DNA of 64,000 nt from Zootoca vivipara (Eukaryota): assembly GCF_963506605.1 (NCBI RefSeq), contig NC_083289.1:7502001-7566000 (forward strand). The letters run 5' to 3'. Of the stretch, positions 29,301 to 34,889 are shown piece by piece. A model generated the notes under the pieces. That model worked only from the letters and a program-made list of their open reading frames with translations. It did not search any database and was not told the DNA's origin. Positions within the stretch are counted from its first letter, which is position 1; every line of letters starts with the position of its first letter. The translations under genes were made by a program, and so were the position numbers.

Positions 29301-29540
29301 GATTAGGTCGGATGACTAGTAATGTTTGGGTTAAGCTGCAAAATTCCCCTACTGAAACCAGCATCATTTCTTCTTCCTTAAGTTAAATAGTTTATGTGAT
29401 ACAGAATTCCACAGGAGAAATAGCAGCACCTACAGAACCCAAGGCATGTCCTTTAGTGATGTGTGTGTTTGTTTTTTTACATATGTATAGATACACACAA
29501 ATACACACTTATGCATTTAAAAATGTCAAAAGTGCTGTAC

Positions 29541-32514
29541 CTCCCGCAAGGATCTTCTCCTCCAGCTCACTCATCTGCTTCCTGTAAGCCCTTAAAGCAG
29601 CTTCTTTGAACGATGGCCGAACTGTTTTTTTCACTGGCATCTGAACAGGGACTTCGGGGACATTTTGATTTTCATCTTCCTGCGCTTCTGCTTCTGTTTC
29701 AACAACTGTATCCTCTGTGAATTCCATCATATCACCACCAACCACACCAGCATCGAAATAGCCATCAGGAGTGTCATCCTCTTGTGAAACAGCGCAAGGG
29801 CTTTCGTACGGAGTCTGCTCTGGCTCGTATTCCTGGACCAGTTCCTCCGATTCATTGGTACTAGTTCTGTTCTCCAGTTTAGCAAGAACTTGCTCCATGA
29901 CTTCCACATAATCCGTTTCATTCTCTCCAGCTGGCTCACTGTAGTCTTCCTCATCCTCAGCTTTGTAGTAATAAGGCTCCGTGTAAACGTCCGAATCCAG
30001 GGTTGTGCTGGATTCGTTAGCAGTGGATTGGGACAAAGTCCGGAACCTCCCCATAAAAGATGACCCGCTGTCCTCATACCCACTCAAACTCTGTGTGCTT
30101 TTATTCCATACCACTTCCAAGGCTGACCTCGCCCGCTGCAGAGTGTTTCCAAATTTAGGAAAGCTGAAAGTCTTGTCTGAAAGGTCAACGCTCAGCCTGC
30201 TGTGCCAAGACTTAGGAGGTGCTTCCTCAGAGTCGTCACTTGGAAGCTCGCTTTGGCTTCGGTACATCATGGACTTCCTGTTCTGGTTCTGATACAGGGT
30301 GTTGTCATTGGTCTCCTGGTAGTCGTCATACTGGCCAATCCACTGGCTCTCAGCTTCGTTATTGAACCCTGGGCCAGAGGGAGAGTTGCTATCCAGGGCG
30401 AAATCATAACTTTCTGTGTCATACTGGAGGTCAGAAACCTGACCGTAGTCTACCTGTTGGTCAGAAGAGCTACTCAAGTCATAAGCCAAAACTTCTTGTG
30501 TTGATGAATCTAACCCCAAGTCTGTGTTCTGTTCCAGCTGATTCCAGTCTTTCCATGGCGAAAGATCATCTTCTAAGGAGACTTGAGAGTTGCTGTAATG
30601 ACTCCTGTCTCCAGACGCACACATGATCCCATTGCTGAGCCCACTGTCAACTGTTTCTGTGTTCTCCGCATCATTCTCAACCCTGTAGGGGGGGCCACCT
30701 TGATTGAACGTCTGCTCTTGTGAACCACCCCCCCAACTGGATGGGTCGTCATGTGTCCTCTGCCAGAGTTCTCGATCAGAGGAAGACAAGAGAGAGCTGC
30801 CATTGGTTCTGCTGAAGTACTGATTCTCTGAAAAGTCTTCAGAGTAGGACTGGCAGAGTTTAGTAAAGTCAGATTCTGAACGGCTGAGCTTAAGCATTCC
30901 AAAGTCATTCTGCGACTGCCAGAGCGGGGTCATGCTGGAGTAATAGCCGCCCTTGGACTCTGCCTGCAGACTCTCAGCCCCTGGTGAGTCTTCATTATGA
31001 TTTATTTTGTTTGGGACACTGTTACCATCTGCAGCTCCTTTAGGGATTCTGCCATTTGAAGACTCTTCTCTTGCCTTTGTGGTACTTCTTTTCATTTGGG
31101 GTGCCGATTTGGAGATCTTTGCATAACTGTTCCGGTTTATATCCGATTCCAGTTCCCTGTCGCTGCTGTCAGGGGATTCCCAGGCATGTCTTTTAGTTTT
31201 GAGGTCAACAGGCACCAGTTTCATGTCCATGCTCTCGTACGTCTGCGATGAAGGCAGACTTCTGTCCTTTCTCTCTTTTGTCTCGTGAGAGATGATATCG
31301 GTTGAAACCCCAATGCCAGTTCCTTTGAGCTTGTAAGATTTTTTCAAAACTAAATCTCTTTGCTGGGGCGTTTCAAAGTACACAAGAATGGGTCTGGGCT
31401 TGGCGTTGGGGCATTTCCTGTGCTGCCCCACCCGCTGGGCAAATTCTATCTTGACAGGATTGGGGGTTTCAGAAAACCCCATTTTCTCCACTAGAGTTCT
31501 ACACACCACATGCTCAACATTTTCAAACTTCTCTTCTGGGACATTTAGAAACCTCAGGCTGGCTTTGCTTCCCGTGTGCCCAATCTGCTTGATGTAATCG
31601 TGGATGTCCCGCGTCTCCCTTCTGGATTGGACGAAGCCCGTCCGCAACTGCTCGATCTCGCTCTGCACGACTTCCACACTGCTGGAGATCTCGTCAATGG
31701 ACTGCTTCAAGGCGTTGACGTGCCCCCGCAGCTCAGAGAGCTCGGTTTCAATTTGGCTGATTCCCTGAAGCTCCTTGAAGATCATTTCCATCACATCGTG
31801 GGTCTGGCTGATGCAGCCTGTGGAACTGAAGCTGGGTTCGAGGGCGCTGGACTTGGGGGCCCGAGCTGTTCTGTCCAAGGACTTGCTCCTGAGCCCCCAG
31901 GTCTTCTTCCATGTGCTGAGCTCGGAGTCTGAGGAAACGCACTCCTGGCTCTTCTTCCATTTCCGCAGCTTCCGCAAGGCCCCGAGCTTCAAGCTGTGCA
32001 AAGTGCGCTCACCGTCCGAGCTCCCATCCGAGGGGGCGAGGCTATTTAGGCTCTTCCGGTTGCGTCTCACCGGCATCGTGTTAGATGAATACGCTTGGTC
32101 CTTACTCGGGCCCTTGACTTCGCTTAAGGACTCTGAATACGAGCTCTCGTTGGAAGATAGATCTTGGAACGGGTCCTCATTGTTATTTGTCAAGAAAACA
32201 CCCTTCTGCAGTCCGTTTGCAATTGCCACCCGATAGCTGAAGGTTGGGGAGAGGGAGAATTCTTTGTTGCTTTCCTCCTCTTCGGTGGACAAATTACGGG
32301 CAGAGGAGCACTTGGCGATCTTTTTGACCGTGCTTTTCAAAGTGTTTGAGAACTTGGGATTCTTTATGTGCCCAACCTGGGGGACGTCTTGTTCGTGTTT
32401 GCTTTGACAGCTCTCTTTCTTCTTTGTACTATTGCCCAATTTCTTTGTAAACATTCCTTTGTAAATCTTATATATGTAGGAAGAGATCAGGCTCTTAAAG
32501 AGAGCAGAAACCAT
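29541..32514 (-). CDS. UNC13C: UNC13C (Munc13-3) first coding exon (exon 2), 991 codons + 1 nt
   Basis: The ORF from MVSALFKSL to [26 protein letters not shown] matches the recalled N-terminus of vertebrate Munc13-3. The ATG is at 32514 (ctccATGG) and the phase-1 donor GAG|gtacag is at 29541/29540. Confidence 0.97.
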
Positions 32515-32751
32515 GGAGGGTGATTTCAGTGGGCCTTTTCCCACAGAGATGGCAATTTTCTATCCATGAGAATGCTGGTTTCCAACACAGTCTTCAGGCG
32601 GTCATCGTGCCGACAGTGGCAAGGGCTAATCCTGGGCGCTGGCACCGTTTCTGTATATACTCTGACAGCAAAATCAGTAGAAACCAATTCCTGAGGGAGG
32701 TCCACAGGTGAAGCAAATTTGGGTCCTGCTCCCCATCGCTCTCTGCAACAT
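32515..32751 (-). other. UNC13C: UNC13C exon 2 5' UTR portion
   Basis: The acceptor tagtaacacctctgctttccttctag|ATGTTG at 32752/32751 has a branch-like tagtaac, a pyrimidine tract and AG, 237 nt upstream of the start codon. Confidence 0.75.
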
Positions 32752-33565: not shown

Positions 33566-34889
33566 TGCCGCTCTGTCCCATCTGAAGCAGCCAGGGAGTT
33601 ATGAGAGGCTGCTGTTCGTGGACTTTAGCTCTGCTTTTAACACTATCCTCCCCCCTAGACTGATGTCCAAACTAGAGGCGCTTGGACTTTCTAACTCCAT
33701 TTGTCTCTGGGTTTTGCATTTTCTGTCAGACCGCTCCCAGAGGGTTAGAGTAGGGTCATATATGTCCACAGCCTTTAGTCTTAACACCGGCTCCCCACAG
33801 GGTTGTGTGTTGAGTCCCCTGCTCTATACCCTCTACACGTATGATTGTACAGCTATCCACTCTAGCAACAAAACCATCAAGTTTGCTGATGACATCACTG
33901 TGGTGGGGCTCATTTCTGGGTGTGTGTGTGTGAGTCCGCCTATCGGGACGAGGTGGAGCAGCTCTTTGGTTGGTGTGGAGATAATAATCTGGTCCTTAAT
34001 ACAGTGGTACCTCGGTTTAAGTACACAATTGGTTCTGGAAGTCTGTACTTAACCTGAAGCGAACTTTCCCATTGAAAGTGGATTAATCTGTTCCAGACGG
34101 GTCCGCGGGGTACTTAAACTGAAAGTACTCAAACCGAAGCGTACTTAAACCGAGGTATGACTGTACTGCCAATACCAAGTAGCTGGTGGTGGACTACAGG
34201 AAGAAAAAGCCGGACATTCAGCCCCTGTATATTGGTGGGGACCGGGTGGAGAGGGTGGCTGTATTTAAGTTTTTGGGTGTTAGCATCGAGCAGAGTATGA
34301 CCTGGAGCGCAAATACCACTGCTCTGGCGAAGAAGGCCCAACAGAGAATATATTTCCTCAGACTTTTAAAAAGAACAAGCTGAGTGAGAGACTGCTGGTG
34401 TCCTTCTACCAAGGCTCCATAGAGAGCATTCTTACATACTGTATCTTTGCTCGATTTTCCAGCTGCACAGTCATGGATAGGAAAGTGCTCCAGAAGGTCA
34501 TAACCACAGCCCAAAAGATTATCGGTCATCCTCTCCCATCTCTGGATGAACTATACAACTCCTGTTACCTTAAAAAAGCAAATAATATTCTACAGGATTC
34601 ATCTCATCCTGGATATAGTCTTTTTGCACCGTTGCCTTTGGGCAGGAGACAATTAAATCAAGAACAAATAGATTTTAAAAAGTTTCTATCCAAGAGCTGT
34701 AACCATCTTAAATGCTGTAACTAAATAATATGATCCCGGGGAGTTGTGATGGGTGTGTATGTGTGTGTGGCTGTAATTGTGTTTTTATATTGTTTTTTTA
34801 TGGGATGGCATTCAATTTCGTTGTACTATGTACAATGACAATAAAGTATTCTATTCTATTCTATTCTTTTCTATTCTATTCTATTCTAT
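33566..34889 (+). mobile_element. Rex1/Babar-clade LINE, 5'-truncated RT, decayed
   Basis: RT motifs are LLFVDFSSAFNTI, NTGSPQGCVLSPLLYTLYTYDC, IKFADD, FKFLGV, KKAQQRIYFLR and FYQGSIESILTYC. It ends in AATAAA plus a (TATTC)n tail, with tctacaa on both flanks. Confidence 0.85.
34002..34163. mobile_element. Tc1/mariner MITE nested in the Rex1 LINE
   Basis: TIRs are cagtggtacctcggtttaagtac / gtacttaaaccgaggtatgactg, with a TA TSD splitting the NNLVLNT motif. Confidence 0.88.

What the first reader, a model, noticed from the sequence alone, without database searches (positions are those of the whole stretch)
31264..31797. Munc13-3 N-terminus appears to contain a domesticated LINE ORF1p module (coiled coil + RRM + CTD start)
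Seen in sequence: residues ~240-417 form an island in an otherwise low-complexity, Ser/acidic ~990-aa exon. A long uninterrupted heptad repeat ([54 protein letters not shown]) is followed by [12 protein letters not shown]..., [29 protein letters not shown] and [21 protein letters not shown]. Established, from recall: LINE-1-type ORF1p (Transposase_22 family) is a trimeric coiled coil followed by an RRM and a CTD. Human ORF1p reads NLRLIGVPE..EN, VQIQEIQRT, ATPRHIIVRF, MKEKMLRAA, LKGKPIRLTADLSAETLQARR. The blocks align in the same order with similar spacing, and the RNA-binding RR pair (R261/R262) aligns with RK. The rest of the CTD seems lost. Inference: the giant intronless exon unique to UNC13C arose partly by exaptation of a retrotransposon ORF1, and the segment is well conserved with the recalled human protein. 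A presynaptic priming factor could therefore trimerise, form condensates or bind RNA through a retroelement-derived module, comparable to L1TD1 (ORF1p) or Arc (Gag). The homology may already appear in automated domain annotations; I know of no functional description.
Basis: partly seen in the sequence, partly recalled or inferred. Interest (0 to 1): 0.9.

Follow-up and report, generated by a model that had tools for sequence, protein, structure and literature searches.

The report
LINE ORF1p-derived module in Munc13-3
The big first coding exon of the synaptic priming gene UNC13C really does contain an ancient, strongly conserved piece of a LINE retrotransposon ORF1 protein; this was noted in one paragraph of a 2025 paper, but the same piece is also in brain UNC13B, where its helix is the known ELKS1 anchor.

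Summary
Observation confirmed. Window 31264-31815 (minus strand) lies in the first coding exon of a reptile UNC13C. It encodes an uninterrupted coiled coil followed by a complete beta-alpha-beta-beta-alpha-beta RRM. After about 12 more residues the chain becomes disordered.

The module is homologous to L1-type LINE ORF1p:
- 459 hits in 1.8 billion proteins.
- A profile of 75 transposon-type hits matches human L1 ORF1p at E 1.7e-20 and the window module at E 2.3e-30.
- The ORF1p C-terminal domain is absent.

The homology is not new. Kitao et al. 2025 (Genome Res, PMC12129022, Methods) state it and left it unanalysed.

Three points were not found in print:
- The brain-specific N-terminal exon of UNC13B (bMunc13-2) carries the same coiled coil plus RRM.
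- The UNC13B and UNC13C modules form one clade against 127 transposon ORF1ps (support 97), and a hagfish protein has the module. This points to one capture before the paralogues split.
- The coiled coil is the motif through which bMunc13-2 binds ELKS1 (Kawabe 2017).

The most likely present role is oligomerisation and active-zone partner binding. RNA binding is possible but unshown.

The parts
29541..32514 (-). First coding exon of UNC13C (Munc13-3): ATG at 32514, inferred splice donor GT just after 29541.
   Evidence: The ORF is listed. ATG and donor were read from the sequence (GGGAG|GTACAG). 110 UNC13C orthologues match it. The exon ends are inferred; no RNA evidence was used.
31264..31815 (-). 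Whole ORF1p-derived module (ORF residues 244-427).
   Evidence: A transposon-ORF1p profile (A2) aligns to ORF 244-427 at 150 bits, covering profile positions 47-224 of 274. hhalign gives E 2.3e-30. This is the only ORF1p-like place in the 64 kb window.
31582..31797 (-). Uninterrupted heptad coiled coil (ORF residues 250-321), 92-93% identical across the sampled vertebrates in its first 50 residues.
   Evidence: AF2 models a helix over residues 9-95. The three-copy model has a/d contacts at strict 3-4 spacing over model residues 19-90. This part alone scores 33 bits against the ORF1p profile.
31657..31785 (-). Counterpart (ORF residues about 254-296) of the ELKS1-binding coiled-coil motif of bMunc13-2 (residues 145-187).
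   Evidence: An ungapped 52-residue alignment is 50-60% identical to UNC13B proteins; horse 141-192 matches ORF 250-301. The ELKS1 mapping and the non-binding of Munc13-3(1-304) come from Kawabe 2017, PMC5379939. The numbering is transferred from horse, so it is approximate.
31306..31563 (-). Non-canonical RRM of ORF1p type (ORF residues 328-413), beta-alpha-beta-beta-alpha-beta.
31264..31305 (-). Stub corresponding to the first residues of the ORF1p CTD ([14 protein letters not shown]), with RK at 31267-31272. The rest of the CTD is absent.
   Evidence: The hhalign alignment stops at template column 249 of 341. ORF 426-600 scores 0.6 bits against the ORF1p profile. pLDDT is about 33 after model residue 187.

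Best explanation
The stretch encodes an ancient domesticated fragment of an L1-type (Transposase_22-type) LINE ORF1 protein. Its coiled coil and its non-canonical RRM are kept; its C-terminal domain is lost. The fragment is built into the first coding exon of UNC13C.

Shown here:
- The homology with L1-type ORF1p.
- The fold.
- The loss of the CTD.
- Strong conservation of the protein from shark to mammal.
- Presence of the same module in the brain-specific N-terminal exon of UNC13B and in a hagfish UNC13C-like protein.
- Grouping of all UNC13 modules on one branch against the transposon ORF1ps.

Inferred:
- A LINE ORF1 was captured once as a 5' coding exon of an ancestral vertebrate unc13 gene, before UNC13B and UNC13C separated.
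- The module now works as a protein-protein device. The coiled coil makes a parallel homo-oligomer (a trimer is plausible) and offers a surface for an active-zone scaffold partner. For bMunc13-2 this is experimentally shown to be ELKS1. For Munc13-3 the partner is unknown and is not ELKS1.
- The RRM is kept as a folded head whose ligand is unknown.

My odds: origin and architecture about 0.95; single capture about 0.8; oligomerising or anchoring role about 0.5.
For: Sequence:
- phmmer against PDB ranks L1 ORF1p first (E 4.4e-4).
- In the N-terminal region, a profile of UNC13C orthologues hits only the four ORF1p PDB sequences (8e-5 to 2e-4).
- phmmer against 1.84 billion representatives gives 459 hits at E<=1e-3.
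- A profile of 75 of the short ones matches human L1 ORF1p at E 1.7e-20 over coiled coil, RRM and CTD. It matches the window module at E 2.3e-30 and 150 bits.

Structure:
- The AF2 model has mean pLDDT 76, with 77-92 in the RRM.
- Foldseek ranks 1-12 are all ORF1p.

Conservation: the module is 72-87% identical from shark to mammal, against 41-71% for the rest of the exon.

UNC13B:
- Named UNC13B proteins carry the module.
- hhalign of the two N-terminal exons gives 165 columns, 36% identity, E 2.2e-26, plus a second collinear stretch at E 4e-4.
- The UNC13B model has the same fold, and ORF1p fills its top eight Foldseek ranks.

Tree: the 16 UNC13 rows form one side of a branch with SH-aLRT 97, against 127 transposon rows.

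Oligomer:
- The three-copy model scores 0.72 against a best control of 0.01.
- The runs agree in at least 73% of contacts, and the partner pLDDT is at least 75.
- The mark was reached by 21 of 30 proteins solved as pairs of one chain and by 0 of 23 solved as single chains.
- On eukaryotes it was reached by 17 of 29 such pairs, but by only 1 of the 7 with no older solved relative.

Function of the paralogous coiled coil: Kawabe 2017.
Against: - Pfam Transposase_22 is below its cut-off on the single sequence (13.3 bits against 22.4, E 0.11). Only 10 of the 75 transposon-type relatives reach it at E<=0.01, so the source family is a divergent branch of the ORF1p superfamily.
- The LINE clade of that family could not be named.
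- The transposon set was picked by similarity to the UNC13C query, which could bias the tree.
- The tree is unrooted and comes from a quick search.
- The hagfish row does not sit with gnathostome UNC13C.
- Homology of the coiled coil by itself is hard to prove, since heptad composition inflates scores.
- The oligomer pass may come from the model's memory of the solved ORF1p trimer. The job had three copies, whereas the calibration used two.
- No dN/dS could be computed.
- Munc13-3(1-304) did not bind ELKS1, so the anchoring role for UNC13C is an analogy, not a result.
Confidence: 0.85

Rival explanations
1. The module still works as ORF1p does. It forms a trimer whose basic RRM binds RNA or drives condensates at the active zone, linking a priming factor to presynaptic RNA.
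For: - The RRM net charge in UNC13C (+3.5, range +1 to +6) is close to that of transposon ORF1ps (+4.7), whereas in UNC13B it has drifted to -1.0.
- The family-invariant RRM residues are kept.
- An R-K pair aligns with ORF1p R261/R262.
- The three-copy model passes its controls: 0.72 against 0.01, with the caveats given.
Against: - The CTD, which in L1 ORF1p forms the RNA-binding cleft together with the RRM (established knowledge, Khazina et al. 2011), is missing.
- The R-K pair lies in a stretch modelled as disordered.
- The UNC13B copy has lost the basic charge yet keeps the fold, which suggests the fold is used for something else.
- No RNA-binding data exist.
Confidence: 0.2
2. UNC13B and UNC13C each captured a related LINE ORF1 independently, so the shared module reflects parallel domestication and not common descent.
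For: Kitao 2025 shows that ORF1p exon capture has happened repeatedly in vertebrates. Outside the module the two exons are almost unalignable.
Against: - All 16 UNC13 rows lie on one side of a branch with SH-aLRT 97.
- The coiled coil is 50-60% identical between the paralogues, against roughly 21-38% identity of the window module to the transposon-type proteins.
- Both copies lost the CTD at the same point.
- A second collinear similar stretch lies downstream (E 4e-4).
Confidence: 0.05
3. The resemblance is convergent or generic: an ordinary cellular coiled coil followed by an ordinary RRM, or a recent repeat insertion mis-read as coding sequence.
Against: - Sequence E-values reach 1e-10 against individual transposon proteins in a library of 1.8 billion.
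- Profile E-values are 1e-20 to 1e-30.
- ORF1p stands clearly above cellular RRMs in both structure searches.
- The module sits at the same place in orthologues from hagfish to mammals.
Confidence: 0.02

Closest known systems
Human/mouse LINE-1 ORF1p (PDB 2ykp, 2yko, 2ykq, 2w7a, 2ldy; Pfam Transposase_22 PF02994)
   Different: - There is no CTD.
- It is not next to an ORF2 or reverse transcriptase.
- It is fixed at one orthologous site in a host gene.
- It falls below the Pfam cut-off.
- It is closer to a divergent, unnamed set of 150-450 residue ORF1p-like proteins than to mammalian L1.
ORF1p fusion exons of Kitao et al. 2025 (Lyosin = L1 ORF1p-MYL4, L1-RFX5, NUP42-L1, USP4-L1), which also name UNC13C
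   Same: A LINE ORF1 was turned into a coding exon spliced to host exons. It is the first coding exon, keeps coiled coil plus RRM, and is no longer recognisable as a repeat.
   Different: - In UNC13C the exon is the canonical one, not an alternative.
- It is much older: vertebrate-wide including hagfish, against Sauropsida or single orders.
- It is embedded in about 990 residues of other sequence.
- The authors explicitly did not analyse it.
ELKS1-binding coiled-coil motif of bMunc13-2 (Kawabe et al. 2017)
   Same: It is the same homologous helix, 50-60% identical over 52 ungapped residues. In both proteins it is followed by the same RRM.
   Different: Munc13-3(1-304) did not bind ELKS1 in yeast two-hybrid or biochemical assays. 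The UNC13C helix is longer and runs into the RRM, whereas the UNC13B model has a low-confidence linker at residues 253-270.
L1TD1 (mammalian stand-alone gene derived from L1 ORF1)
   Same: It is a host gene derived from L1 ORF1p. This rests on established knowledge and on Kitao 2025.
   Different: By recall, L1TD1 is a free-standing gene that keeps RRM and CTD modules and binds RNA. The UNC13 module is a fusion exon without a CTD. This was not compared with tools here.

Membership tests
L1-type (type II, Transposase_22) LINE ORF1p superfamily, by descent | Significant sequence similarity to ORF1p RRM and coiled coil | tested here: met
   E 4.4e-4 to 2ykp with the single sequence. 459 hits in 1.84e9 proteins. 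Profile links of E 1.7e-20 and 2.3e-30. The RRM alone scores 110 bits against a shuffle maximum of 9.8.
L1-type (type II, Transposase_22) LINE ORF1p superfamily, by descent | Pfam PF02994 gathering score | tested here: not met
   13.3 bits against a cut-off of 22.4, E 0.11. Only 10 of 75 transposon-type relatives reach E<=0.01, so the model is narrow for this branch.
L1-type (type II, Transposase_22) LINE ORF1p superfamily, by descent | Non-canonical RRM fold directly after a long coiled coil | tested here: met
L1-type (type II, Transposase_22) LINE ORF1p superfamily, by descent | C-terminal domain (CTD) after the RRM | tested here: not met
   The alignment ends at template column 249 of 341. 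The next 175 residues score 0.6 bits and are modelled as disordered.
L1-type (type II, Transposase_22) LINE ORF1p superfamily, by descent | Homotrimer through the coiled coil | tested here: inconclusive
   The three-copy model scores 0.72 against a best control of 0.01, with in-register a/d contacts over residues 19-90, at least 73% contact agreement and pLDDT at least 75. The calibration used two copies, and a like trimer is solved, so the pass may be from memory. Dimer against trimer was not discriminated.
Active LINE element ORF1 (a transposon gene, as opposed to a derived host exon) | Lies upstream of an ORF2 (endonuclease and reverse transcriptase), is multi-copy and is at a non-orthologous position | tested here: not met
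   There is a single ORF1p-like place in the window. It is in frame inside the UNC13C exon and at the same position in orthologues from hagfish to mammals. The RT fragment at 33618-34049 is on the other strand, upstream of the gene, and unrelated.
Domesticated ORF1p fusion exon (Kitao 2025 class) | ORF1p-like coding exon spliced to host exons and conserved across genera | tested here: met
   Full-length UNC13C and UNC13B proteins join the module to C1, C2 and MUN domains. It is stated for UNC13C in PMC12129022.
Domesticated ORF1p fusion exon (Kitao 2025 class) | Purifying selection (dN/dS below 1) | not testable with these tools
The only proxy is protein identity of 72-87% from shark to mammal, above the rest of the exon.
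ELKS1-binding coiled coil of bMunc13-2 | Homologous sequence | tested here: met
   50-60% identity over 52 ungapped residues. The whole module aligns at E 2.2e-26.
ELKS1-binding coiled coil of bMunc13-2 | Binds the ELKS1 C-terminus | not testable with these tools
   The literature reports no binding for Munc13-3(1-304) (Kawabe 2017). Nothing was tested here.

The most novel reading that the evidence does not exclude
The C2A-less Munc13 isoforms (Munc13-3 and bMunc13-2) owe their active-zone targeting device to one retrotransposon ORF1 captured in the vertebrate ancestor. The ORF1p coiled coil still trimerises the priming factor. In Munc13-3 the still-basic RRM additionally binds RNA or another polyanion, tying vesicle priming to presynaptic RNA or condensates.
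Probability: 0.15. Interest if true: 0.85.

Novelty: already known. Interest (0 to 1): 0.55.

Why it matters
Synapse papers still describe the N-termini of Munc13-3 and bMunc13-2 as having no homology to any known protein, and as sharing only a 43-54 residue coiled coil. The transposon literature records the UNC13C-ORF1 likeness in one Methods paragraph and sets it aside.

Joining the two gives a concrete picture. A roughly 165-residue folded module of retroelement origin (coiled coil plus RRM) is shared by both C2A-less Munc13 isoforms. It dates to the base of the vertebrates. It contains the one experimentally mapped active-zone anchor of bMunc13-2.

This makes several open questions directly testable:
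- What recruits Munc13-3 to cerebellar active zones?
- Do these isoforms act as trimers?
- What does the unnoticed RRM bind?

It would also be one of the oldest ORF1p domestications, and a neuronal one, beside Arc and the PNMA proteins on the Gag side.

Tried and rejected
- Pfam on the whole exon and on the 212-residue module gave only weak coiled-coil families. On the RRM alone, Transposase_22 stayed below its cut-off. A single-sequence Pfam scan therefore cannot decide this case.
- The search for homologous proteins with the cut-out module found only five fragments, because of its length filter.
No orthologue DNA was available, so no dN/dS and no synteny or exon-structure comparison could be done.
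- hhalign of the full A3 and A1 alignments returned only the shared C1-C2-MUN part. The N-terminal exons had to be cut out in a script.
- The supplementary files of Kitao 2025 (Fig. S8, Table S4) are not held.
- Cluster look-ups gave no names or taxa for the transposon-type relatives, so their LINE clade and hosts remain unknown. The Atlas search gave only unnamed clusters from Chordata, Arthropoda and Cnidaria.
- Searches for any paper joining Munc13 or UNC13B with L1 ORF1 or Transposase_22 found nothing.
- The reads tools were not used.
- P0122 and P0263 are unnamed Logan proteins of an unidentified mammal, and their source was not traced.
- Rejected readings: cellular RRM or convergence, recent insertion or artefact, and independent capture in the two paralogues (see the rival explanations).
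Full report
**What is there.**
Window 29509-32544 on the minus strand is one 1011-codon open frame. Its ATG is at 32514. A good splice donor (GGGAG|GTACAG) follows 29541. This is the large first coding exon of UNC13C (Munc13-3). Using residues 232-443 as the query returned 110 proteins, almost all named unc-13 homolog C. They run from a tegu (90% identical) through birds, mammals, frog, sturgeon, teleosts and sharks (71-84%) to a hagfish protein (42% over 82% of the query). The window therefore comes from a lepidosaur-like reptile.

**Is it an island?**
Partly. In an alignment of ten exon-length orthologues, ORF residues 241-300 are 92-93% identical on average and residues 301-420 are 57-76%. 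The module as a whole is 72-87% identical between this reptile and shark, teleosts, frog, bird and mammals. The rest of the exon is 41-71% identical. Other conserved stretches exist at residues 151-210, 541-600 and 781-900, so the exon is not featureless outside the module.

**Homology with LINE ORF1p: sequence.**
- Single-sequence Pfam fails. It returns only weak coiled-coil families, and on the RRM part alone Transposase_22 gets 13.3 bits against a cut-off of 22.4.
- Every more sensitive test agrees. phmmer against all PDB sequences ranks human LINE-1 ORF1p first (2ykp and 2yko, E 4.4e-4). The alignment runs from the coiled coil through the RRM to the first residues of the CTD.
- A profile of 22 UNC13C sequences hits the expected Munc13 and C2 structures. 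In its N-terminal part it hits only the four ORF1p sequences in PDB (8e-5 to 2e-4).
- phmmer of the 212-residue module against 1.84 billion cluster representatives gives 459 proteins at E<=1e-3. After the UNC13 proteins these are proteins of about 150-450 residues.
- An alignment of 75 of these (A2) has the consensus SRRxNL-F-G-PE..E..., RAHR-G, KPRPIIVKF, KLKGT-I-I-EDL. As a profile it matches human L1 ORF1p at E 1.7e-20 over coiled coil, RRM and CTD.
- The only non-coiled-coil Pfam families among those 75 are Transposase_22 (10 members) and NADAR (4 members).
- The window module aligns to that profile with hhalign probability 99.8%, E 2.3e-30, over 155 columns, and with HMMER at 150 bits.
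- Split in two, the RRM alone gives 110 bits and the coiled coil alone 33 bits. The best of 200 shuffles of each reaches about 10 bits.
- One caveat: A2 was chosen by similarity to this query, so its score on the query is partly circular. The link from A2 to solved L1 ORF1p does not share that problem.

**Homology with LINE ORF1p: structure.**
- An AlphaFold2 model of the module with the orthologue alignment has mean pLDDT 76. It shows a long helix at model residues 9-95, then beta-alpha-beta-beta-alpha-beta at 97-182 with pLDDT 77-92. From residue 187 on there is nothing ordered.
- Foldseek against PDB puts L1 ORF1p chains at ranks 1-12 (E 1.4e-6 to 6e-5, 22-27% identity). Cellular RRMs begin at E 3e-3 with 13-18% identity.

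**What is missing.**
All UNC13 sequences stop matching the transposon profile at positions 206-228 of 274. hhalign ends at template column 249 of 341. The 175 residues after the module score 0.6 bits. Only about a dozen residues corresponding to the start of the CTD remain. Among them is an R-K pair (ORF 425-426) that lines up with ORF1p R261/R262 if the structural alignment is extended without gaps. This stub is modelled as disordered.

The residues that are nearly invariant in the transposon family are all kept in UNC13C. These are the two E of the PE..EN motif, the R of AHR, the following G, PRP, F, and the L of LKG.

**Already known.**
Kitao, Ichiyanagi and Nakagawa (Genome Res 2025, PMC12129022) screened RefSeq proteins against Dfam ORF1ps. 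[quoted passage not shown] S8B)", that it was outside the scope of the study, and that "no further analysis was performed". The core of the finding is thus in print, unanalysed. No other paper in the library joins Munc13 or UNC13 with L1 ORF1 or Transposase_22.

**What I did not find in print: UNC13B.**
- The best non-UNC13C hits of the module carry C1, C2 and MUN domains. They are named unc-13 homolog B: Anolis P0121 and horse isoform X18 P0124.
- An emu "uncharacterized protein" (P0118) aligns to Anolis UNC13B over 796 columns (P0121 residues 1-751). A 776-residue basking-shark protein (P0120) shares only the module with the UNC13B proteins and groups with them in the tree.
- A search with the Anolis module returned 184 proteins. 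The 120 listed are almost all named UNC13B isoforms from squamates, turtles, a crocodile, birds, a monotreme, marsupials and placentals.
- Cut to the N-terminal exons, profiles of UNC13B and UNC13C align over 165 columns (36% identity, E 2.2e-26). The alignment covers the coiled coil and the whole RRM. A second, collinear weak match lies further downstream (E 4e-4), at window 30100-30153.
- An AF2 model of the emu N-terminus is disordered overall. Between residues 197 and 360, however, it has a helix followed by the same beta-alpha-beta-beta-alpha-beta fold at pLDDT 70-85. Its top eight Foldseek matches are L1 ORF1p (2w7a, E 3.5e-4, rmsd 3.2 over 97 columns).

**One capture or two.**
I built a maximum-likelihood tree (IQ-TREE, quick search, 182 profile columns) of 10 UNC13C, 5 UNC13B, the shark protein and 127 transposon-type domains.
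- All 16 UNC13 rows fall on one side of a branch with SH-aLRT 97.
- Gnathostome UNC13C is a clade at 99.
- The shark protein sits with UNC13B.
- The hagfish protein sits outside gnathostome UNC13C.

Both paralogues also lost the CTD at the same point, and they share the second collinear stretch. Together this favours one capture before UNC13B and UNC13C separated, at or before the base of the living vertebrates. The limits are an unrooted tree, a quick search, and a transposon sample biased toward the query.

**Link to function.**
- Kawabe et al. 2017 (PMC5379939) mapped ELKS1 binding and ELKS1-dependent active-zone recruitment of bMunc13-2 to its N-terminal coiled coil, residues 145-187. They noted a 52% identical coiled coil in Munc13-3 and otherwise called the N-termini unrelated. 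They also found that Munc13-3(1-304) does not bind ELKS1.
- Liu et al. [quoted passage not shown]
- In my alignment, horse UNC13B 141-192 matches ORF residues 250-301 without gaps at 50% identity. The ELKS1 motif therefore corresponds to window 31657-31785, the most conserved part of the ORF1p-derived coiled coil.
- It follows that the experimentally defined active-zone anchor of bMunc13-2 is the retroelement-derived helix. The homology between the two isoforms also extends about 110 residues further, through an RRM that the synapse literature has not noticed.

**Oligomer.**
A three-copy prediction of module residues 15-190 scored 0.72 against 0.01 for the best of three controls.
- The runs agree in at least 73% of contacts, and the partner pLDDT is at least 75.
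- The interface is a parallel, in-register bundle with a/d contacts at strict 3-4 spacing from model residue 19 to 90 (ORF 250-321).
- The mark was reached by 21 of 30 proteins solved as pairs of one chain and by 0 of 23 solved as single chains. On eukaryotes it was reached by 17 of 29 such pairs, but by only 1 of the 7 with no older solved relative.
- This job had three copies, whereas the calibration had two. The L1 ORF1p trimer is solved, so the pass may reflect memory of that structure and not binding.
- I take it as support for self-association. It is not evidence for a trimer over a dimer.

**RNA binding.**
This is untested. The RRM net charge is +3.5 in UNC13C, +4.7 in the transposon proteins and -1.0 in UNC13B. 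UNC13C has thus kept an ORF1p-like basic RRM and UNC13B has not. Against RNA binding, the CTD that completes the RNA cleft in L1 ORF1p is gone. I put retained nucleic-acid binding in Munc13-3 at about 0.2.

**Verdict.**
The claim is not new, because a 2025 paper states it. The extension is not in the searchable literature and gives clear experiments. That extension comprises the UNC13B copy, a single ancient capture, identity of the coiled coil with the ELKS1 anchor, an unnoticed RRM in both isoforms, and loss of the CTD.

- The LINE clade of the source could not be named.
- The reads tools were not used.

Noticed in passing
window 33618-34049 (+): This is a reverse-transcriptase fragment (Pfam RVT_1, E 3.3e-11). 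It lies about 1.1 kb upstream of the UNC13C ATG on the opposite strand. It is a decayed LINE or retroelement piece unrelated to the ORF1p module.
   Followed up: partly
P0125 and 4 of the 75 members of alignment A2 (not in the window): Some transposon-type ORF1p-like proteins carry a C-terminal NADAR domain in place of the usual CTD region (P0125: NADAR at residues 264-416, E 1.1e-36). An ORF1p coiled coil plus RRM fused to NADAR is an architecture I do not know from described LINEs. Source organisms are unknown (Logan or ENA contigs).
   Followed up: no
window 30100-30153 (-), ORF residues 798-815: The motif [18 protein letters not shown] lies in a conserved stretch of the exon (residues 781-900). 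It is weakly similar to a collinear stretch of the UNC13B N-terminal exon (hhalign E 4e-4). This is a second possible shared element of the two N-termini, of unknown function.
   Followed up: partly
P0118 and P0262 (emu LOC135324444 / LOC135325099) and P0120 (basking shark LOC144685626): These are annotated as uncharacterized proteins. They look like the brain-specific N-terminal exon of UNC13B annotated as separate genes. P0118 aligns to Anolis UNC13B residues 1-751 at 45% identity.
   Followed up: partly
window 31915-32094 (-), ORF residues 151-210: A basic stretch just upstream of the module (…[19 protein letters not shown]…) is 73-83% identical across vertebrates. It is almost as conserved as the module, and no known domain matches it.
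   Followed up: no
Atlas look-alikes of window 31264-31797 (-): Several of the nearest ESM Atlas clusters (score 0.92) carry Pfam PF25298 Baculo_FP_2nd in 64% of members. This hints at a link between baculovirus FP-type proteins and ORF1p-like modules. It is a lead only.
   Followed up: no
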